The position numbers were made by a program, and so were the translations under genes. Of a stretch of DNA of 64,000 nt, positions 31,680 through 62,002 are shown one piece after another; position 1 is the stretch's first letter; every line of letters begins with the position of its first letter. The DNA is from Hypanus sabinus (Eukaryota). The notes under the pieces are model-generated. The model saw only the letters and a list, made by a program, of their open reading frames with translations. It had not been told where the DNA came from and did not search any database. The stretch lies in the NCBI RefSeq assembly GCF_030144855.1, contig NC_082708.1, forward strand, positions 102,114,001-102,178,000. The letters run 5' to 3'.

Positions 31680-32680
31680 ACTGAGTAAAGATAGGCAGCA
31701 ACCTCTCTGCCACAATTATTTCAAAGACTTGTGCTCCACAAGATTGTGTCTTCAGCCTGCCCCTATTCAACTCCCTATATACTCATGAATGTGTGGTCAG
31801 ATTCTGCTCTAGCTCCATCTAAAAGTTTGCAGATGATACCATCATAATGGGTCATATCTCAAGTAATGATTAGTCAGAGTACAGTAAGAAGATAGCTTAG
31901 TGATACAGTGTCATGACAATAACATTGCTCTCAATGTCAGCAAAGAACTGGTCATTCACTTCAGAAAAGAGGCAGTGCACAAACCCCTGTCTACATCAAT
32001 GGTGTTGAGTTTGAGAGGGTTGAGAGCCTCAATTTCTCAGGAGTGAACATCACCAATTGCCTGACTTGATCCAATCATGTTGGTGTCACAGCCAAGAAAG
32101 CTCAGAGATGCCTCTACTTCCTTAGGAGACTAAATAAATTTGTCACATGGATAATAGGTGCAGAAGTAGGCCATTTAGCCCTTCGACCCAGCACCACCAT
32201 TCAATGTGATCATGGCTGATCTTCCACAATCAGTACCCTGTTCCTGCCTTCTCCCCATATCCCTTGATTCTGCTGTCTTTAAGAGCTCTAACTAACTCTT
32301 GCTGCCTCACTGAAGCAGCCAGCATTACAAAAACCCAACTACCCCAGACGTTCTCTCTTCTCCCCTCTCTCATCGGGTAGAAAATATAAGATTCTGAAAG
32401 CACATACCACCAGTCAGCTTTTATCCCAGTTACTGAGACTCTTGAATAGACTTCTTGTGTGATAAGATGCACTCTTGACCTCACAATGCTACCTTGTTTG
32501 CACGTTATCATTTTCCTACACTGAACTTCTTTGGAATTGTTTACACTTTATTCTGCATCGTTAATTTTTGCCTTATTCTACCTCAAAGTACTATGTAATT
32601 ATTTGAACTGCATGAATAGTATGCACGATGATATCGTCACAGTATTTTGGTGCATATGACAATAATAAAGTAATACCAGA
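31680..32680 (+). mobile_element. Rex1/Babar-like LINE fragment with nested minus-strand CR1 3' end (~32150-32297)
   Basis: aagtttgcagatgataccatc (KFADDT) and AKKAQRCLYFLRRL. Insert gtgcagaagtaggccatttagccc is a CR1 tail in reverse. Confidence 0.8.
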
Positions 32681-32995
32681 AGTAATATCTACCCCTGTAA
32701 ATAGCAGGTCACATACTTGATATTTGAGGCCATTCAGGTGTCACTCCATTCATTGTAATGAGCTTAACAGATTCAACTTTCATTAAGGTTTATATATAGC
32801 TCATCTGATGTAAAATAAAATTTCAAAGCATCTTGCAAGGAGTGAGTGGACACTGCAACAAGTGAACAATCTTAAAATGGGAGATTAATAAATCAGCAAA
32901 AACACAAGCCTTTAGGGACAGGAGACAAGTTAAGCAGCAACAACTCATAAAGTAAATGTGGAAAGACATGTTTATATAGTACATAACAGAAACTC

Positions 32996-34698
32996 AAGTC
33001 AAGTCAAGTCAAGTCACTTTTATTGTCATTTCAACCATAACTGCTATGTACAGTACATAGTAAAAATGAGACAATGTTTTTTCAGGACTGTGATGTTACA
33101 TGACACAGTACAAAAACTAGACTGAACTATGTAAAAAAACAACACAGAGAGAAAAAACAACTACACTAGACTACAGACCTACCCAGGACTGCATGAAGTG
33201 CACAAAACAGTGCAGGCAATACAATAAATAATAAACAGGACTATACGACAGTAAGGTGTCAGTCCAGGCTCTGGGTATTGAGGAGTCTAATAGTTTGCGG
33301 GAAGAAACTGTTACATAGTCTGGTTGTGAGAGCCCGAATGCTTTGGTGCCTTTTCCCGGATGACAGGAGGGAGAAGAGTTTGTGTGATGGGTGCATGGGG
33401 TCCTTCATAATGCTGTTTGCTTTGTGGATGCAGCATGTGGCGTGAAGTCTGTAATGGCAGGAAGAGAGACCCCAGTGATCTTCTCAACTGACCTCACTAT
33501 CCACTGCAGGGTCTTGTGATCCGAGATGGTGCAATTTCTGAACCAGGCAGTGATGCAGCTGCTCAGGATGCTCTCAATACAACCCCTGTAGAATGTGATG
33601 AGGATGGGGGGTGGGAGATGGACTTTCCTCAGCCTTTGCAAAAAGTAGAGATGCTGCTGTCTGTCTTTGCTATGGAGCTGATGTTGAGGGAACAGGTAAG
33701 ATTCTCCGCCAGGTGAACACCAAGAAATTTGGTGCTCTTAACGATCTCTACCGAGGAGCCGTCAATGTTCAGTGGGGAGTGGTCACTCTGTGCCCTCCTG
33801 AAGTCAACAAATATCTCTTTTGTTCACATTCAGAGACAGGCTGTTGTCTCTGCACCAGTCCGTTAGCTGCTGCACCTCCTCTCTGTAAGCTGACTCATCA
33901 TTCTTGCTGATGAGACCAACCACGGTCGTGTCATCGGTGAACTGGATGATATGGTTCGAGCTGTGTGTTGCAGCACAGTCGTGGGTCAGCAGAATGATCA
34001 GCAGTGGACTGAGCACACAGCCCTGGGGGGGCCCTTGCTCAGTGTGATGGTGTTGGAGATGCTGTTCCTGATCCGGACTGACTGAGGTCTCCCAGTCAGG
34101 AAGTCTAGGATCCAGCTACAGAGGGAGGTGTTTAGACCCAGCATGCTCAGCTTTCCAGTCAGTTTCTGAGGGATGATTGTGTTGAATGCTGAACTAAAGT
34201 CTATGAACAGTATCCCAACGTATGTGTCTTTTTGTCCAGGTGGGTTAGGGCCAGGTAGAGGGTGGTGGCAATGGCGTCATCTGTTGAGTGGTTGGGCGGT
34301 ACGCTAACTGCAGGGGTTGCAGTGAGGGGGCAGCAGGGTCTTGATATGCCTCATGATGAGCCTCTCGAAATACTTCATGATGACGGACATTGAGGCAGGA
34401 CACTGAAGACTTCTACACGGGGTCAATGGTGGTAGTCTTGAAGCACGTTGGAATGGTGGCGCTGCTCAGGGAGATGTTGAAGATGTCAGTGAGAACATCT
34501 GCTAGCTGGTCTGCACATCCTCTGAGCACTCTGCCAGGAATATTGTCTGGTCCAGCAGCCTTCTGTGGGTTGACCCTGCACAGGGTTCTTCTCACATCGG
34601 CCACAGTGAGACACAGCACCTGGTCATTTGGAGGAGGGGTGGACTTCCTCGCCGCCACATCATTTTCCACCTCAAAGCCGGCGTAGAAGTTATTCAGC
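32996..34698 (-). mobile_element. 5'-truncated Rex1/Babar-like LINE with (CTTGA)n tail
   Basis: [62 protein letters not shown]; (caagt)n at ~32995-33015. Confidence 0.93.
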
Positions 34699-34843
34699 GG
34701 TCACATATGTGGCCCACGCTCCTAGAAGATAGCAGTGTGGTTAATGTAGATGAACTGAACACTCTGATGAGGGAGAGGGAGGAGTGGAGTCCGTCACCTT
34801 GCTCGATACCGGACCCCTAGGCCTGAGTCAATGTAGTAGTAGT
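34699..34843 (+). mobile_element. Probable RTE-like LINE 3' end with (TAG)n tail, opposite in orientation to the adjacent Rex1 copy
   Basis: gtggcccacgctcctagaagatagc resembles RTE C-terminal coding (VAHVLED-like); ends gtagtagtagt. Lies inside the TSD acagaaactc (32986-32995 / 34844-34853). Confidence 0.5.
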
Positions 34844-35519
34844 ACAGAAACTCGGGATCAGAGCTCAGTGGTGGACAGCTCAGAACTATCTTGAATGAGG
34901 GGGAAAGGGGAGGTGCATGGAGGTTGGAAGTGGGATTGTAAAGGATATGTATAAATCTTAAAAGGACATCTGAGTAGGGGAAAAAAATTACCTACAGAGG
35001 TAAGAACTGCTCCAGGACTTGTGAAATCTGACTTCTATAGGTGAGGTCCATGCGATTTGTGGATCATACATGCAAAAATTAATTCAGTGCAAACCATATG
35101 TAAACATGCCCTTTAACACTGTTGCATATGTCCAAATCCCTGTGCCCCTATGTGTAACATACACAGATAGAACAGCGAGCACTTTCAGTACACAATTTTG
35201 CTTTGATTAAATTACTTCAGCTATCATATGTACATATGTATGCTGCATGAAATAATTTGTAAGCTCTTCTATCCAGATGAGTCAGAAGTAAAAATGTTAG
35301 GTGGAACCCTGTTAGAAAGATGTATTCGTCAGTGATAGTATATATATTGATAAATCAAAGTAGGCTGCTGCCAGAAGCACAAAATAAGAAAATTATTCAA
35401 GCCTGATGTGCTGGTGCTTTGATCCACAGGGTAGGAAAGTAATTTGGCAAAATTCTTGTAACTGCTAGCCTCACAGCAGCTTATGAACCAAGCCTAATCT
35501 ATGAGGAACTGGGGACAGA

Positions 35520-38500
35520 TCAGAATCAGGTTTATTATCACTGATATATGTTATGAAATGTTCTGTTTCACAGTAGTAATACAGTATCAGTGCAATACAT
35601 TAAAAATTACTGTAAGGCATAATAAAAATATATAAAAACTAAATAAATAGTGCAAAGAGAGAGCAAGCAAGTGTGGTAATTTTCATGGGTTCATAAACCA
35701 TTCAGAAACTGATGGTGGAGAGGAAGAAGCTGTTCCTAAACTACACACACAAAATGCTGGTGGAACGCAGCAGGCCAGGCAGCATCTATAAGGAGAAGCA
35801 TTGTCGACGTTTTGGGCCCTTCGTCAGGACTAACTGAAGGGAAAGATACTTTGAAAGTAGTGGGGGGAGGGGGAAATGCAAAATGTTAGGAGAAGACCGG
35901 AGGGGTGGGATGAAGCTAGAGCTGGAGAGGTGATTGGCGAAAGTGATACAAAGCTGGAGAAGGAAAAGGATCATGGGATGGGAGGCCTTAGGAGAAAGAA
36001 GGTGGGGGGAGCACCAGAGGGAGATGGAGAACAGGCAGAGTGATGGGCAGAGAAAGAGAAAAACACAAACAACTAAATATGTCAAGGATGGGGTAAGAAG
36101 GGGAGGAGGGGCATTAACGGAAGTTAGAGAAGTCAATGTTCATGCCATCAGGTTGGATGCCGGTATATAAGGTGTTGTTCCTCCAACCAGAGTGTGGATT
36201 CATCTTGATAGTAGAGGAGGCCATGGATATTCATATCAGAATGGGAGTGGGACGTGGAATTAAAATGTGTGGCCACTGGGAGATCCTGCTTTCTCTGGCG
36301 GACCGAGCGTAGGTGTTCAGCGAAACAGTCTTCCAGTCTGCGTCGGGTCTCACCAATATATAAAAGGCCACACTGGGAGCACCGGACGCAGTATAACACA
36401 CCAGCTGACTCACAGGTGAAGTGTTGCCTCCCCTGGAAGGACTGTCTGGGGCCCTGAATGGTGGTGAGGGAGGAAGTGTAAGGACAGGTGTAGCACTTGT
36501 TCCATTTACAAGGATAAGTGCCAGGAGGGAGATCATTGGGCAGGGATGGGGGTGTTGAGTGGACAAGGGAGTCGTGTAGGGAGCGATTCCTATGGAAAAA
36601 AGAAAGGGTGGGAGGGAAAGATGTGCTTGGTAGTGGGATTCCGTTGGAGGTGGCGGAAGTTACAGAGAATTATACGTTGGACCTGGAGGCTGATGGGGTG
36701 GTAGGTGAGGACAAGGGGAACCCTATCCTGAGTGGGGTGGCAGGCAGATGGGGTGAGGGCAGATGTGCAGGAAATGGGAGAGATGTGTTTGAGAGCACAG
36801 TTGATGGTGGAAGAAGGGAAGCCCCTTTGTTTAAAAAAGGAAGACATCTCCTTCATCGTGGAATGAAAAGCCTCATCCTGAGAGCAGATGCAGCAGAGAC
36901 GGAGGAATTGTGAGAAGGGGATAGCGTTTTTTGCAAGAGACAGGGTAGGAAGGGGAATAGTCCAGGTAGCTGTGAGAGTCTGTAGGCTTATAGTAGATAT
37001 CAGTAGATAAGCTGTCTTCAGAGATAGAGACAGAAAGATCAAGAAAGGGGAGGGAGGTGTCAGAAATGGACCAGGTAAATTTGAGGGCAGGGTGAAAGTT
37101 GGCGGCAAAGTTAATGAAGTCAACGAGCTCAGCATGCGTGCAGGAGGCAGCGCCAATGCAGTCATCGATGTAGCGAAGGAAAAGAGGGGGACAGATACCT
37201 GTATAGACTTGGAACATGGACTGTTCCACAAAGCCAACAAAAAGGCAGGCATAACTGGGACCCATGCGCGTGCCCATGGCTACACCCTTGGTTTGGAGGA
37301 AGTGGGAGGAGCCAAAGGAGAAATTATTGAGAGTAAGAACTAATTCAGCTAGATAGAGGAGAGTGGTGGCAGAGGGCAATTGGTTAGGTCTGGAATCCAA
37401 AAAGAAGCGAAGAGCTTTGAGACTGTCCTGTTGGGGCATGGAGGTATATAGGGACTGGATATCCATGGTGAAGATAAGACGGTGGGGGCCAGGGAACTTA
37501 AAATCATTGAAAAAATTCAAAGCGTGAAAAGTGTCACGAACATAGGTGGTAAGGGATTGAACAAGGGGGTATGAGTTCGTTGGGGCAGGAGCAAGCTGAG
37601 ACAATAGGTCTAGCTGGACAGGCAGGTTTGCAGATCTTGGGTAGGAAGTAGAAATGGGAAGTGCGGGGTGTGGGAACTATGAGGTTGGTGGCAGTGGCTG
37701 GGAGATTCCCAGAGCTGATAAGGTTGGTGATGGTATAGGAGACAATGGCCTGGTTCTCCTTAGTGGGGTCATGATCAAGGGGTAAATAAGAGGAGGTATC
37801 AGCTAGTTGTTGCTGTGCCTCGGCCAGGTAGAGGTCAGCACGCCAGACTACAACAGCTCCCCCCTTATCAGCAGGTTTTATAGTGAGGTTGGGACTGGTG
37901 CGGAGGGAGCGGAGAGCAGAGCATTCGGAAGGAGTGAGGTTGGAATTGGAACAGGGTGTGGTAAAGTCAAGACGGTTGATGTCCCATCGGCAATTAGCAA
38001 TACAGAGATCTAGAGCAGGTAGAAGACCAGAGCGGGGTGTCCATGAAGAGGAGGAGGGTTGAAGACAGGAGAAGGCATCATCGGTGGGGGTAGGAGAGTC
38101 CTTGTCAAGGAAGTAAGCTCGGAGACGGAGCCGACGGAAGAAGAGTTCAGCGTCATGGCCTACGCAGAACTCACTGAGGTGTGGGCGAAGGGGTACAAAG
38201 CTGAGGCCCATACTGAGGACTGAGCACTCTGCCTCAGAGAGTTGAGGGTCGGAGGGAATGGTAAAGACCCGGCACGGATGAGAGATGGGATCAGAGGGGG
38301 GAGGGAGGCTGGTAGTGTCAGTGGAGAGGGGAGGGTTGGGGTGAGAGGAAGATGGAGCCTCTGAGGGCCCAGGTGATGATGGGATCTGAGGGAGAGGGGA
38401 TTGCAGAGTGGTGGTGGGGGAGGGGGAGACGGGAGTCACAATCTCAGCATGTGAAGACCCGGCCTGGAGTTCAAGGCTGGAGTCGCAGTTGGTGGTTGCG

Positions 38501-38910
38501 CAATCGCTTTGAAGCTGTCCATGTCCGTTGGAACCCGTGTTAATGGTGCTGGAGTCTGGGTTTTCAATATGCCCTGGGTCGCTGGGGCAGCCGAGATCGA
38601 CTGGTAAACTGTTGGTTGTGTTTCATCAGGCTCCTGTACCTCCTCCATAATGGTAGTAGTGAGAAGAGGATATGTCCTGGATGGTGAAAGTCCTTCATAA
38701 TGGATGCCACTGCCTTGAGGTATTGCCTTTTGAAGATGTCCTTAATGGGGAAGAGGCCTGTGTCCATGATTGAACTGTCTGAGTTTACAACACTCTGCAG
38801 ATTTTTCCTGATCCTGTACCTTGGTACCTCCTCAATACCAGATGCTGATACAGCCAGTCAGAATGTCCTTCATGGTGCACCTGTAGAAATGTTCCTGTCT
38901 TTGGTGACAT
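35520..38910 (-). mobile_element. Rex1/Babar-like LINE 3' fragment split by the Penelope insertion (parts 35520-35742 and 38605-38910)
   Basis: Tail cagaatcaggtttatt; ORF 38564..38767 (IMKDFHHPGHILFSLLP..RRYRSL). The two parts read through at ctgttcctaaact|gttgg. Confidence 0.85.
35743..38604 (-). mobile_element. Penelope-like element (Neptune-type): RT, Cys-rich linker, GIY-YIG endonuclease, 3' pLTR
   Basis: IKPADKGGAVVVW, QTKGVAMGTRMGPSYACLF, LRYIDD, TDIYYKPTDSHSYL, YCVRCSQCGLLYIGETRRRL. 6-bp TSD TAAACT (35737-35742, 38605-38610). Frameshifted. Confidence 0.96.
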
Positions 38911-43678: not shown

Positions 43679-45645
43679 GTAGGCTGTGGAGTACCTTGTT
43701 TTCTTAACATTATCGGTGAGTCCCAAGAATTTGAATGTATTTGGGTTTTCACCTAATCTGCAACATCAAAATTGAGCTAAAGTGCTCTGGGTCTTCAGAG
43801 TTAAGAGCCAAAGGCTTTAGAGAAATCAATGAAAGCCACAAAGAGTTCTTGGTGATGTTCTGAACACTAGGACAGAAGATGGGGAAGGCTTATTAAAGCA
43901 AATGAAACATGTTTTAAGTTACAAACCAGTGGGAGTAGTGGACAATCTGCAGACCAATAGCAACTGAGTGATACAAATCATGGTGATTTAAAAGGGAGTG
44001 TTCACTGATCACTGTGGTCATTCTGCAGAAAGCATAAATAGAAAGAAATGAAGAGAAAAAGACATGGCAACAGCAGGAATCTCAAGCAAAGTAACAGTAC
44101 TTAACAAACCTTTGAGGGCCTGGCCCTATGTCAGGTTTAGGGCACATTCTTTCAGTAAATGTCAAGTAAAGTAACTTTGAGCCAACATTAGGAAATTCAG
44201 TAATGATAGCTGTAGCTGGCTTTGCTCATTTTCTGGGTAATAAAGGTTCTGCTCCAGTTGACCATGACGTGATTTCAAAAAGTCATAAATGACATTTGGT
44301 GTAAGTTCATATTACCCATTGCTCTTGTATGTGCCCCAGGCAAAATGTGACCTGAAGTGTTCTATTAATGGAAACAATATGTGGAATTATGTGTAAGAAG
44401 ACCTAGAAATCAAAAGCACGATTTTATTTGCTGAAGATTTCCTAGCCCCTGTGGCTAGAAGATGTTATTAACAAATTTGGTGAGCCATTGGACCAAATAT
44501 TGTGTAGCAGTGATTGACATCAGCTTCTGACATTTCTTTAAAGCAGTGGAAGTTCCTCACCTTTGATAGCATTTTAGGATATTAACATTTGTTTATAATT
44601 TAATGTCCAGAATAGGACAATGTTCAATTGGTCTTAACAAATGAATTATGGAAATTTAAATTTTTTTTTACATTCAGGCTCTGTCTTGCCTAATAGTATT
44701 ATCACCTTCTTCAACAAGCCCTGCATTCTTTGAAGATGTGTGCACGAGTGCTTTGTCTGAAACATAAAAAATTAGGAGACCATCCAGCCGTTCAAACCAG
44801 CTCACTATTTAAAAAAATCATGGCTGATCATGTATCTCAATACCATAATCCTGTTCTCTCTTCTTTCTGCTTGATACCTTTCGCACGTAGAAACTTAGCT
44901 ATACCTTTTCTTTAACATATTCAGTGACTGGCCTTAGGAGCACTCCATGGTAGCAAATTCCATAAGTACACCACCAATGTAAGCAGAAATTTCCCCGATA
45001 TCATCCATAAGTGGAAACATTTCAGCTATCCAGGCTGACTAACACTGCCAAATTTCAGTAAATTTCAATTAGATCTCTATTCCTCAGCACTATAGAAAGT
45101 ACAAAGTCAATTGGCCTAATCTCTCTCATGTTAGAAATGATAGTGCAGAGGATGAAGCAGTTGGTTTACAAGTAGATACAGCGCTCAGTGAGATTGTAAG
45201 GAAGGATAGGCTGTTGATGTGGCAAAATTGCAGTCAGTGGGTTGGGTTGAAGTATGTCTGTAAACTGAATAGTCAGTCCAACAGTTTTAGAAAGTAAGAA
45301 TAAAGTAAAAGAGAAGGTAAGTGCAAGAAAGGTTGCAGAATTCTCCAGAACAATTAGAAATACAAAAAAGTTAAGAGAAGGAGAATAAATTAACTCTGGG
45401 AACATGGGGGCAAAATTGAAAGGGGCGCTGAATACAAGACTGAAGGTGTTTGAATGCAAGAAATATATGAACTTGGGTAAATTATCTTGTAGCACAGTTA
45501 GAAATTGGCGGGTATGATGTGACCATCACCAAGTCATAGCTGAAAGAAGATCACAATGGTGAGCTTAATATCCAAGGATATACATTGTATCAAAAGGACA
45601 GGCAGGTAGGGAGAAGGGGTGGAGTGGCTCTCTTGGTAAAAAAAT

Positions 45646-45915
45646 GTAGTAGTAGTAGTAGTAGTGTACTAGCAGTAGTCTCTTGAAGTCCGAGGAAGAC
45701 GAATGTGTTGCGCAGTCAACATCTGTTGGCACGCATATGACTTCTGAGGCTGAAGTCCGAAGCGCAGATGCGGTCACAGATGGGACAAGGAGCACCGCCT
45801 GTTGGGGCAGGAGCGGAAACCTTCCTGTGTCTTTCTTGACTCGCTTTGAGGTGCTGCATGCGCCAGTTGGCTTGGAAGTTGTTTGCTGTTCCAACTTCCA
45901 AGCCAACAACTTCCC
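45646..45915 (-). mobile_element. RTE-clade LINE 3' end with (CTA)n tail inserted in the CR1
   Basis: ORF 45716..46012 ends CPICDRICASDFSLRSHMR (C2H2-like RTE C-terminus); gtagtagtag tail at ~45646-45665. Confidence 0.8.
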
Positions 45916-59207: not shown

Positions 59208-62002
59208 ACAGTCTGCCAAGGACTAGATCTTGACATACAAGACTGGTGATCCAGAACTCTGCAAGAAGTCCAGCTATGATCAATGGAAGGATTTCTAAAG
59301 AATAAAAGAGCAATTTTTAGTAATGTTTGAATAAGAAATGGATGCAAGTTGGCTCTGGCAGGGATGGCAGGCCATTATTTCCTAAAAGGCGAAGCTTAAA
59401 ATCATGAATGGTTGTGATGCTTCACTCCCTGATGAGCTCAATGCCTTTTTAGGTACACTTTGAAAGGGAGGATAAAACTAAACCTGTGTGAATCCCTGCA
59501 GCATTGGACACCAAGTGATATCTGTTGCAGAGGCTGATATCAGAACATTTCAAGAGGGAGATTCCTCACTAGGCATCTGGCTCGATGGTGCATGTGTCAG
59601 GGTACTAAAAACCTGTGTCAACCAACTGGTGGGAGTGTTGAAGGACATCTTAAATCTCTCATTCTTACAATCAGAGATTCCCACCTACTTCAAAAGGGCA
59701 CCTATCATGCCAGTGCCCAAGAAGAGCAGGGACAGCTGCTCCAATGACTAATGCCCAGTTGCACTTACATCTACTGCGATGAAATGCTTTGCAAGGTTGG
59801 TCATGACCAGAATCAATGCCTGCCTCAGCATGGACATGGACCTGCTGTAATTTATATCTGACCGCTATAGTTCTGCAGTGGATGCAATCTCATTGACTCT
59901 CCACTTGACCTTGGACCATCTGGATGACAGCAATACCTACATCAGGTTGCTGTTCATTGACTACAGCTCAGAGTTCGAACATAATCATCCCCTCAATACT
60001 AATCAACAAGCTTCAAAACCTGGGCTTCTGTACCTCCCTCTGCAACTGGGTATATGACTTCCTCATTGAAAGACCACAGTCAATGTGGACTGGAAATAAC
60101 ATCTTCTCTTTGCTGACAATCAACATTCTAACTCTTTGCATCACCACTTGGTATGGAAGAGCCACTGCATGGGATTGGAAAAAAAGCTGCAGAGGATTGT
60201 AAGCTCAGCAATCTCCATCATGGGCTTCCCCAACATTGAGGACATCTTCAAAAGATGGTGCCTCAAGAAGACACCATCTATTATTAAGGAACCTCACCAC
60301 CCAGAATATGGTCTCTTCTCATTACTACCATCAGATAGGAGGTACAGAGGCTGAAGGCACAGACTCAAAGCGTCAGGAACAGTTTCTACCCCTCCACCAT
60401 CAGATTTCTGAAAGGACAACATTACCTCACTGTTTTTGCTGTCATTTTGAACTACTTATTTAAATATATACAGTATATATTTCTTATTGAAAGTTATAGC
60501 TTTTATGCATTGCACTGTAATGCTGCCACAAAACTAAAAAATTTCACACCATTTGTCAGTGATAATAACCCCTGATTCTGATTCAATGTGATTGACAGAT
60601 GCATGTGAAATTAGCAATGGAGTGCAGTCTTTCTTGTAAGTGAGCCTGCTTGACATCTCCTCAGACTGATGTTAGGGCCCTTGAGTTCCAAACTAGCTAC
60701 CTTTTCTTTACATCGAGTCGCTAATGGAAAACAGACATGAAACTCATTGTTTTACTAATATTTCAGTGACTTTGGTTCATTAATATTTGAAAACATTTGT
60801 ATTTGTAATATACTGTTTTATATCATAGAAGTGTTATTTCTTCATCATTGACCTTGAATTCTGCAGGGATGCAATGACAAAAGAACAAGAATTACCAAGT
60901 CATGTGTGTTGGGAGGGGGTAGTACTATTCCCATATATTTCCTGTAATTGTCCTAGATGGTAGAGTTTAGTTTTAGGAGGCTGTTGATGAAACCTTGGGA
61001 AGCTGAGTGTTTTTATTTAGTATAGAGGTTACCTATTGTGTCATAAGGATATTCCTGTTGGAGGGACTGAATATCAAAATTGTTGGATAAGATGCCAGTA
61101 AGGTGTATTGTTTTGTATTAGAAAATAATAAGTTTCTTTAATTTTGTTAGAACAACAACCATTCAGATGCGTAGAATATTCCATTATATTATGATTGATT
61201 TCTTTAGGATGATAGATACATTTTGGGATGTCAGGGGTGAGTTATTCAGCACAGGAAGTCTCAGTATCTAATCTACTTTAGTTTTTACATGTCTGTCCAG
61301 TTACATTTCTGTTCAGTAATACCTCTGAGATATCAATGGAGGTCTACATTGAATATCACAGCAATCCGATTAGATCCTTTCTTATCATGGCAGGCATATT
61401 TTAGATATGAAATTGTTTGCTACTTATCAGCCCAAAACTGGTTTCCAAATTGCACTGCATGCGCACATTGCACACAGACTGCTTTGTAACTGATGCGCTT
61501 GCAGATGAAATTATGACTTTTGCAGTTATCAGCAAACATTCTAACCTCTGACCTTCTGATTGAATAAGTTTGTTAATCAGCTGGCAGAAGGTGGATGGGC
61601 TGACAAAAACAACATCTCCAATGAAATTTGGTCACGGGTGACAGGACTTTAGCAGACACTATCAGTCTCAGGACACTGTGTGACTCCAGAGGGTGGAATG
61701 TTTTCCCCTTGATTGCCACTTGTTTCAGTTATCCTAAGGTTTTCAGATTTCTTCAGGACAGGAACAGTCCCATCAGCCTACTGGGACATGCCAATGAAAA
61801 TGCTCCATCTAAAGCTAGTCCCATTTTCTAGCATTTGGCAAGTACCCTTCATAATCGTTCCAACCACCAGCCTGTTCAACTGTCTTCCAAAAGTTGTTAT
61901 TGTACCTGACTCAATCACTTCATCAGTCCTCGTACATACCATCCATTATAGAAAATAGTTGACCCAGAAGTTCCCATTAAATCCTTCCCCTCTCACCTTA
62001 AA

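What the first reader, a model, noticed from the sequence alone, without database searches (positions are those of the whole stretch)
32986..34853. Two different LINE 3' ends head-to-head inside a single 10-bp TSD
Seen in sequence: acagaaactc flanks both ends (32986-32995 and 34844-34853). Between them lie a minus-strand Rex1-like copy with its (CTTGA)n tail at the left TSD and a 145-bp plus-strand segment (34699-34843) ending in a (TAG)n tail at the right TSD. No TSD is visible at the internal junction. Inference: both target-DNA 3' ends may have primed reverse transcription on different RNAs (Rex1 and an RTE-like RNA), a two-template form of twin priming that yields a cross-clade chimera. 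The RTE assignment rests on resemblance only.
Basis: partly seen in the sequence, partly recalled or inferred. Interest (0 to 1): 0.7.

Follow-up and report, generated by a model that had tools for sequence, protein, structure and literature searches.

The report
Two LINE tails sharing one duplication
Two dead jumping-gene fragments of different families lie tail-outward between one repeated target sequence; this is more likely one element landing in the edge of an older one than a rare double-template copying accident.

Summary
ACAGAAACTC occurs only at 32986-32995 and 34844-34853. Between the two copies lie a 5'-truncated, frameshifted minus-strand CR1/Rex1-like LINE with a (CTTGA)n tail, and a 145-bp plus-strand piece ending in (TAG)n.

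New here: the 145-bp piece is the coding C-terminus plus tail of a different LINE. It is 73% identical over 33 aa to a database protein that resembles endonuclease-RT C-termini. It shows no similarity to the Rex1 C-terminus. Its stop codon is the first tail unit, which is RTE-like. Both pieces are high-copy repeats, and the flanks are single copy. Three related organisms at 2-3% divergence carry the filled junctions. No empty or one-piece allele was seen.

The single-event reading is not established. The two bases after the Rex1 5' end (GG, 34699-34700) match the two bases after the right repeat. So a 12-bp TSD, ACAGAAACTCGG, is intact on the right and split 10+2 on the left. The simplest reading is an ordinary truncated RTE-like copy with a clade-typical 12-bp TSD, later hit by Rex1 inside its left TSD copy. 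That accounts for every base (about 0.55). Two-RNA twin priming remains possible (about 0.3). It is known for L1 with small RNAs, so it would be a new variant only.

The parts
32986..32995 (.). Left copy of the direct repeat ACAGAAACTC. Under the sequential model these are the first 10 bp of a 12-bp RTE-type TSD.
   Evidence: present in contigs of organisms F and H (records 9 and 25)
32996..33016 (-). Rex1-like tail, (CTTGA)n on the minus strand. The last TC of the target is in register with the repeat, and AACTC matches the unit AAGTC at 4 of 5 positions.
   Evidence: TRF 32994-33016, period 5, 4.6 copies, 100% matches
33017..33258 (-). Rex1-like 3' UTR, about 240 nt, with a hairpin near the tail that is not statistically significant
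   Evidence: ORF stop at 33259-33261; fold z-score -1.44
33259..34698 (-). 5'-truncated, frameshifted ORF remnant of a CR1-superfamily (Rex1-like) LINE. It runs from LNNFYAGFE, just upstream of the RT domain, to the C-terminus.
   Evidence: RVT_1 and PF09004 hits; 59 RT fragments, mostly teleost, 50-89% identical; their alignments stop at 34697 and the upstream motif MWQGIQ..ITNYK..LPDA is absent; at least 5 reading-frame pieces; depth 1e5-1e6 against about 10 in the flanks
34699..34700 (.). GG at the internal junction. It matches GG at 34854-34855 just after the right repeat, so it is a candidate last 2 bp of a 12-bp TSD split by the Rex1 insertion. C at 34698 could be the Rex1 5' end or a 1-bp Rex1 TSD.
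   Evidence: direct reading; interpretation is inference
34701..34833 (+). C-terminal coding end of a second, RTE-like LINE. It reads ..MWPTLLEDSSVVNVDELNTLMREREEW, has a frameshift at about 34788, then reads VRHLARYRTPRPESM.
   Evidence: P0063 is 73% identical over 33 aa (tblastn E 1.7e-10 against the window); the frame after the shift matches P0063 RVRHCA; P0063 resembles endonuclease-RT C-termini, RVT_1 / DUF6451 clusters; repeat depth 4e3-4e4
34834..34843 (+). (TAG)3 tail, or (GTA)4 counting 34833-34844. The first TAG is the stop codon of the restored frame, so there is essentially no 3' UTR.
   Evidence: the 30-mer 34815-34844 is shared with other copies in organisms F and G (contigs start at 34815)
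34844..34855 (.). Right copy of the repeat: ACAGAAACTC (34844-34853) plus GG (34854-34855). 34854 is A in relatives F and G, at a CpG.
   Evidence: table 3 (34854 G>A in X15 and X18)

Best explanation
Two ordinary retrotransposition events, not one. First, a 5'-truncated copy (about 143 bp, 34701-34843) of an RTE-like LINE, or of a short non-coding element sharing its 3' end, inserted on the plus strand by target-primed reverse transcription. It made a 12-bp target-site duplication, ACAGAAACTCGG. Later a Rex1-like (CR1-superfamily) LINE inserted on the minus strand inside the left TSD copy, between its 10th and 11th base. The top-strand end ...AAACTC-3' paired with the element's (CUUGA)n tail. 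That insertion produced a 1.7-kb 5'-truncated copy with a TSD of 0-1 bp. The outcome is that 10 bp of the older element's TSD appear to bracket both elements, with both tails facing outward. Shown: the identity and boundaries of both pieces, the 10+2 split repeat, and that the insertion predates the split from three relatives. Inferred: the order of events and that there were two events.
For: The right flank reads ACAGAAACTC|GG, and the two bases between the Rex1 5' end and the RTE-like piece are GG. So every base of 32986-34855 is accounted for without filler. 34854 is A in two relatives, but it lies in a CpG, so G is the likelier ancestral state. TSD lengths then match each clade: RTE peak 10-12 bp, L2/CR1 peak 3-5 bp with shorter ones common (PMC4245944; PMC6007223). 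The TSD starts with A, as in animal RTE LINEs, and medaka RTE-3_OL has a (TAG)n tail. Both families are abundant: depth 1e5-1e6 and 4e3-4e4 against about 10 in the flanks. By rough inference, tens of Rex1 insertions per genome should fall in the last few bases of another element's 5' TSD copy. No step needs an unprecedented mechanism.
Against: It requires a positional coincidence, a Rex1 hit within one particular 12-bp stretch. It also requires a Rex1 TSD of at most 1 bp, and the TSD habits of this Rex1 family are unknown. The GG match is only 2 bp: about 1/16 by chance, nearer 0.2 if junction offsets are allowed. It would vanish if the RTE family consensus itself reads GG before TCACAT. No relative with the RTE piece alone was found; organisms F, G and H show only filled junctions. 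The visible private substitutions are similar in the two pieces, 17 in 1703 bp against 1 in 145 bp (table 3). So the RTE piece is not clearly older.
Confidence: 0.55

Rival explanations
1. This is the first reader's model: single-event, two-RNA twin priming. One staggered break with 10-nt 3' overhangs was used twice. The bottom-strand end (...TTTCTGT-3') primed reverse transcription on the (UAG)n tail of an RTE-like RNA. The top-strand end (...AAACTC-3') primed on the (CUUGA)n tail of a Rex1 RNA. The two cDNAs, 145 nt and 1.7 kb, were then joined at 34698-34706.
For: One exact 10-bp repeat brackets both pieces, with each tail abutting it. The pieces are in opposite orientation and each starts at its own 3' end. 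They come from unrelated LINE families. No separate TSD longer than 5 bp was found for either piece. The 10-bp stagger fits the RTE range. There is 2-nt (TC) and 1-nt (A/T) microhomology to the two tails. Inverted chimeras ascribed to twin priming on a second RNA are published for L1 with snRNAs (PMC4476161) and with tRNA, 5S rRNA and mRNA (PMC13174262). Earlier scan notes report twin-priming-like copies of L1 and RTE in this genome (unchecked).
Against: It leaves GG at 34699-34700 as a chance match to the flank. It needs two different LINE RNPs, or one RT copying a foreign LINE RNA from its tail, at one break at the same time. No precedent for that turned up in five full-text searches and the seven papers I opened. 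Published two-RNA cases are rare; my rough estimate is at most about 1e-4 of L1 insertions, and those prime internally on small RNAs. No empty site was recovered.
Confidence: 0.3
2. Sequential insertion in the other order or at the exact boundary. Rex1 goes in first with a 10-bp TSD, and the RTE-like element later inserts between the Rex1 5' end and the right TSD copy without making a TSD.
For: The geometry is compatible.
Against: Both elements would then show clade-atypical TSDs: 10 bp for a CR1-like element and 0 for an RTE-like one. It needs an exact-boundary hit. GG stays unexplained.
Confidence: 0.05
3. One Rex1 event whose template or repair partner carried an antisense RTE 3' end. This could be 5' transduction from a source locus lying next to an inverted RTE copy, a template jump to an antisense transcript, or capture of a stray fragment at the 5' junction.
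For: Chimeric 5' junctions and extra nucleotides are common for L2-type LINEs.
Against: The captured piece would have to end exactly at the last base of the RTE tail and abut the TSD, which is an unexplained coincidence. The flanks are single copy. No second copy of the junction occurs in the window.
Confidence: 0.05

Closest known systems
Nested or adjacent retrotransposon insertions (one LINE landing in the flank or TSD of an older one)
   Same: Two independent TPRT products; each TSD length fits its clade (12 bp RTE-like, 0-1 bp CR1-like); the split 10+2 repeat is explained.
   Different: The hit lies inside a 12-bp TSD copy and so mimics a shared TSD. The order of events is inferred, not observed.
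Classical twin priming of L1 (Ostertag and Kazazian 2001; described in PMC2912911)
   Same: One TSD around two segments in opposite orientation, with both target 3' ends acting as primers.
   Different: Classical twin priming uses one RNA, and the second primer anneals internally. Here the two pieces are 3' ends of unrelated LINE families, each with its own tail.
Two-RNA twin-priming chimeras of L1: inverted U1/U2/U5/U6-L1 (PMC4476161) and antisense tRNA, 5S rRNA and mRNA-L1 (PMC13174262)
   Same: A second RNA reverse-transcribed from the other end of the break, in opposite orientation, inside one TSD.
   Different: Those cases involve one RT (L1 ORF2p), small or cellular RNAs, and internal priming by microhomology. 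Here both RNAs would be LINE RNAs of different clades, primed at their own microsatellite tails, in a non-mammal.
RTE-clade LINE 3' ends (RTE-3_OL of medaka with a (TAG)n tail, PMC6007223; Rex3 with its stop codon 3 nt before the tail repeats, PMC6274825)
   Same: Trimer tail, stop codon at the tail, TSD of 10-12 bp starting with A. From my own memory (not tool-tested), the C-terminal motif ..RRL..GH..R...G.P..T....EL..LM.EREEWR resembles the BovB C-terminus.
   Different: Only 145 bp are present. No RT domain is available to place it in a tree. The single relative found (P0063) is unnamed.
Rex1/Babar LINEs (Volff et al. 2000; review PMC6274825)
   Same: RT-encoding element related to CR1, frequent 5' truncation, and a 3' UTR followed by short tandem repeats.
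   Different: Clade placement was not tested here. The best protein matches are unnamed teleost RT fragments. The review calls Rex1 teleost-specific, whereas earlier scan notes say this genome is a stingray.

Membership tests
Twin priming (any form) | A single TSD brackets the whole insertion | tested here: inconclusive
   An exact 10-bp repeat brackets both pieces. However, the repeat is 12 bp on the right and split 10+2 on the left, which fits a TSD belonging to the RTE-like piece alone.
Twin priming (any form) | Two segments in opposite orientation, each continuous with a target 3' end | tested here: met
   Rex1 antisense on the top strand follows the left repeat; RTE-like sense on the top strand ends at the right repeat.
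Classical (one-RNA) twin priming | Both segments derive from the same element RNA | tested here: not met
   The segment's relative P0063 shows no similarity to the Rex1 C-terminal pieces. hhalign against the Rex1 N-terminal profile gives probability 0.6%. There is no DNA similarity between the pieces.
Twin priming (any form) | Empty orthologous site with no intermediate one-piece allele | tested here: inconclusive
   Organisms F, G and H (2-3% diverged) carry filled junctions. Organism A did not cover the site. Only 4 runs could be laid.
RTE clade LINE (145-bp piece) | Very short 3' UTR ending in a short AT-rich tandem repeat | tested here: met
   The restored frame ends ...PESM, and its stop is the first TAG of (TAG)3. 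Compare Rex3 and RTE-3_OL.
RTE clade LINE (145-bp piece) | TSD of about 10-12 bp, often starting with A in animals | tested here: met
   TSD of 10 or 12 bp with first base A.
RTE clade LINE (145-bp piece) | RT/EN phylogeny places the element in the RTE clade | not testable with these tools
   Only the last ~45 codons are present. Pfam finds nothing in P0063. Atlas neighbours are EN-RT fragments with RVT_1/DUF6451.
Rex1/Babar LINE (minus-strand copy) | RT-encoding non-LTR element with a 3' UTR followed by oligonucleotide tandem repeats | tested here: met
   RVT_1 hit, about 240-nt 3' UTR, (CTTGA)4.6 tail.
Rex1/Babar LINE (minus-strand copy) | RT phylogeny groups it with Rex1/Babar rather than CR1 or L2 | not tested
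   No named reference sequences were obtainable. The hits are unnamed teleost fragments.

The most novel reading that the evidence does not exclude
One staggered break made by the RTE-type machinery (10-nt overhangs) was used by two different LINE RNPs at once. The RTE-like RNA was copied from one 3' end and a Rex1 RNA from the other. That would be a cross-clade, two-tail form of twin priming. It would show that a 'stringent' LINE can integrate from a nick made by another clade's endonuclease.
Probability: 0.3. Interest if true: 0.6.

Novelty: already known. Interest (0 to 1): 0.33.

Why it matters
If it was a single event, it would be the first case I found of two autonomous LINEs of different clades sharing one integration. 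That bears on how strictly LINE reverse transcriptases choose their templates, and on whether one clade's nick can serve another clade. As it stands, the locus mainly teaches a caution. A TSD that seems to bracket two elements can be the older element's TSD cut by the newcomer, and the few bases at the internal junction decide between the two readings. The locus also adds a clean example of an RTE-like 3' end whose stop codon is its first tail repeat.

Tried and rejected
(1) Is the 145-bp piece a colinear upstream continuation of Rex1? Rejected. Homologues align only to 34697, and their upstream motif is absent on the minus strand.

(2) Is it an inverted upstream part of the same Rex1 (classical twin priming)? 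Rejected.

(3) Protein searches with the 39-aa peptide. The search of representative proteins gave only bacterial repeat proteins sharing an ERE.W motif. The word search with 40 aa found nothing. Atlas gave nothing usable. Only the search with region 65-104 of the 104-aa open frame found P0063.

(4) Rfam on 32800-35000 gave no family, including no HDV-like ribozyme. Folding of the piece was not better than shuffles.

(5) Other copies in the window: none. A 14-nt match at 45643-45656 is a (TAG)6 microsatellite inside another LINE's endonuclease region.

(6) Exact 24-mer and degenerate 39-nt pattern scans of metagenome and prokaryote genome contigs returned 0 hits.

So neither the P0063 contig nor full-length Rex1 loci could be read.

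(9) Sequence look-ups in earlier scan notes came back blank.

Full report
**Observation.** The 10-mer ACAGAAACTC is at 32986-32995 and 34844-34853 and nowhere else in the window on either strand. At this offset it is the only 10/10 match among about 62,000 positions. Exact 10-mer pairs 500-5000 bp apart occur at about 2e-6 per position pair. The left copy is followed at once by (TCAAG)4.6. The right copy is preceded by GTAGTAGTAG.

**The minus-strand element.** Positions 33259-34698 carry at least five reading-frame pieces of a LINE ORF on the minus strand, with hits to RVT_1 and PF09004.
- The most 5' piece finds 59 RT fragments, mostly teleost and unnamed, at 50-89% identity.
- Their alignments stop at 34697, at LNNFYAGFE. 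Their conserved upstream stretch (MWQGIQ..ITNYK..DASLPDA) is absent. So the copy is 5'-truncated at 34697/34698.
- The ORF ends at 33259. A 3' UTR of about 240 nt and the pentamer tail follow.
- This fits a CR1-superfamily LINE of the Rex1 type (PMC6274825). I could not test the clade by phylogeny.

**The 145-bp piece.**
- *Searches that failed.* The peptide read from 34701 gave nothing in Pfam, in the search of representative proteins, in the first word search or in the Atlas.
- *The hit.* Searching residues 65-104 of the natural 104-codon open frame 34506-34817 found P0063. This is a 90-aa protein from an ENA contig, 73% identical over 33 aa (tblastn E 1.7e-10 against the window).
- *What P0063 resembles.* Its Atlas neighbours are eukaryotic fragments, including 'endonuclease-reverse transcriptase' and RVT_1/DUF6451 clusters. 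From my own knowledge (not tool-tested), its motifs (RRL..GH..R, G.P..T, EL..LM.EREEWR) resemble the BovB/RTE C-terminus.
- *The reading frame.* After EEW the window copy is frameshifted at about 34788. The other frame reads VRHLARYRTPRPESM, matching P0063's RVRHCA. It stops at the first TAG of the tail. There is therefore practically no 3' UTR.
- *Literature match.* This is as described for Rex3/RTE-type elements. Medaka RTE-3_OL has a (TAG)n tail.
- *Not Rex1.* P0063 has no similarity to the Rex1 C-terminal pieces. A Rex1 N-terminal profile does not match the peptide.

So the piece is the 3' end of a different, RTE-like LINE, or of a non-coding derivative sharing its tail; earlier scan notes report such derivatives in this genome (unchecked).

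**Related genomes.** Twenty public runs hold parts of the locus. I laid contigs of four organisms on 32300-35500.
- *Depth.* The Rex1 part has depth 1e5-1e6 and the 145-bp piece 4e3-4e4. The flanks at 32728-32941 and 34868-35500 have depth about 10. Both pieces are repeats sitting in single-copy DNA.
- *Left junction.* Single-copy contigs cross it in organism F (32375-33025) and organism H (32452-33024).
- *Right junction.* Single-copy contigs cross it in organisms F and G (both from 34815).
- *Divergence.* These contigs are 2-3% diverged from the window.
- *Contig ends.* The contigs end 30 nt inside the repeats, as 31-mer contigs should. This places the repeat boundaries exactly at the inner edges of the 10-mers.

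The structure therefore predates the split of these organisms. No empty or one-piece allele appeared in what the tool printed. Organism A did not cover the site.

**One event or two.** Two-RNA twin priming is a published idea for L1 with snRNAs (PMC4476161) and with tRNA, 5S rRNA and mRNAs (PMC13174262). It would give exactly this geometry. But the bases at the internal junction matter.
- *The split repeat.* The right flank reads ACAGAAACTC|GGGATC. The bases between the Rex1 5' end and the RTE-like piece are (C)GG, followed by TCACATATG. So a 12-bp repeat, ACAGAAACTCGG, is intact on the right and split 10+2 by Rex1 on the left.
- *Ancestral state.* 34854 is A in F and G. It lies in a CpG, so G is probably ancestral.
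- *Sequential reading.* An RTE-like copy with a 12-bp TSD was later hit by Rex1 with a 0-1 bp TSD. This gives each element a clade-typical TSD (RTE peak 10-12 bp; L2/CR1 peak 3-5 bp with shorter ones common). It leaves no base unexplained.
- *Twin-priming reading.* Under this model GG is a coincidence of about 1/16, or about 0.2 if junction offsets are allowed.
- *Rough expectations (inference, not measurement).* Assume about 1e5 Rex1 copies, several 1e5 TSD-bearing partner elements and a genome of several Gb. Then tens of Rex1 insertions per genome should fall in the last few bases of another element's 5' TSD copy. Two-RNA twin priming in L1 seems to account for at most about 1e-4 of insertions (my estimate). 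Here it would also need two different LINE RNPs at one break.

I therefore put sequential insertion at about 0.55 and two-RNA twin priming at about 0.3. Other routes take the rest: the reverse order, or 5' transduction, template jump or fragment capture.

**Limits.**
I could not read the P0063 contig or full-length Rex1 loci.
- The host name (stingray) comes from earlier scan notes.

Noticed in passing
window 34416-34670 (-): The Rex1-like RT piece is 75-80% identical at protein level to fragments annotated in catfish (Hemibagrus guttatus) and electric eel (Electrophorus voltai). It is 89% identical to a fragment filed under the bacterium Aeromonas cavernicola, presumably fish contamination. 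If the host really is a stingray, that identity is high for about 400 My of vertical descent. It hints at horizontal transfer or strong conservation.
   Followed up: no
window 34699-34714: A 16-nt near-palindrome, GGTCACATATGTGGCC, sits exactly at the internal junction (repeat finder I19). Its meaning is unknown: chance, or a junction-formation footprint.
   Followed up: no
window 45530-45700: A LINE endonuclease N-terminal fragment (..GYTLYQKDRQVGRRGGVALLVKK) is interrupted by a (TAG)6 microsatellite. The microsatellite shares 14 nt (AATGTAGTAGTAGT) with the end of the RTE-like piece. It is probably just a microsatellite.
   Followed up: partly
window 36150-38620 (-): Long minus-strand ORF pieces just downstream of the locus (..KPADKGGAVVVW.., ..YIDDC..) look like a Penelope-like or other non-LINE reverse-transcriptase element. 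This was judged by eye only.
   Followed up: no
window 32300-32727: The left flank beyond about 260 bp is itself a repeat, with depth 1e3-1e4 rising leftwards. Relatives show recurrent 74-127-bp skips there (joints 32369>32461 and 32413>32540).
   Followed up: no
window 59400-60600 (+): A second, older and more diverged Rex1/CR1-like LINE copy (..SLPDELNAF.. to ..NSFYPSTIRFL..). It is only 69% identical over 134 nt to the copy studied here.
   Followed up: partly
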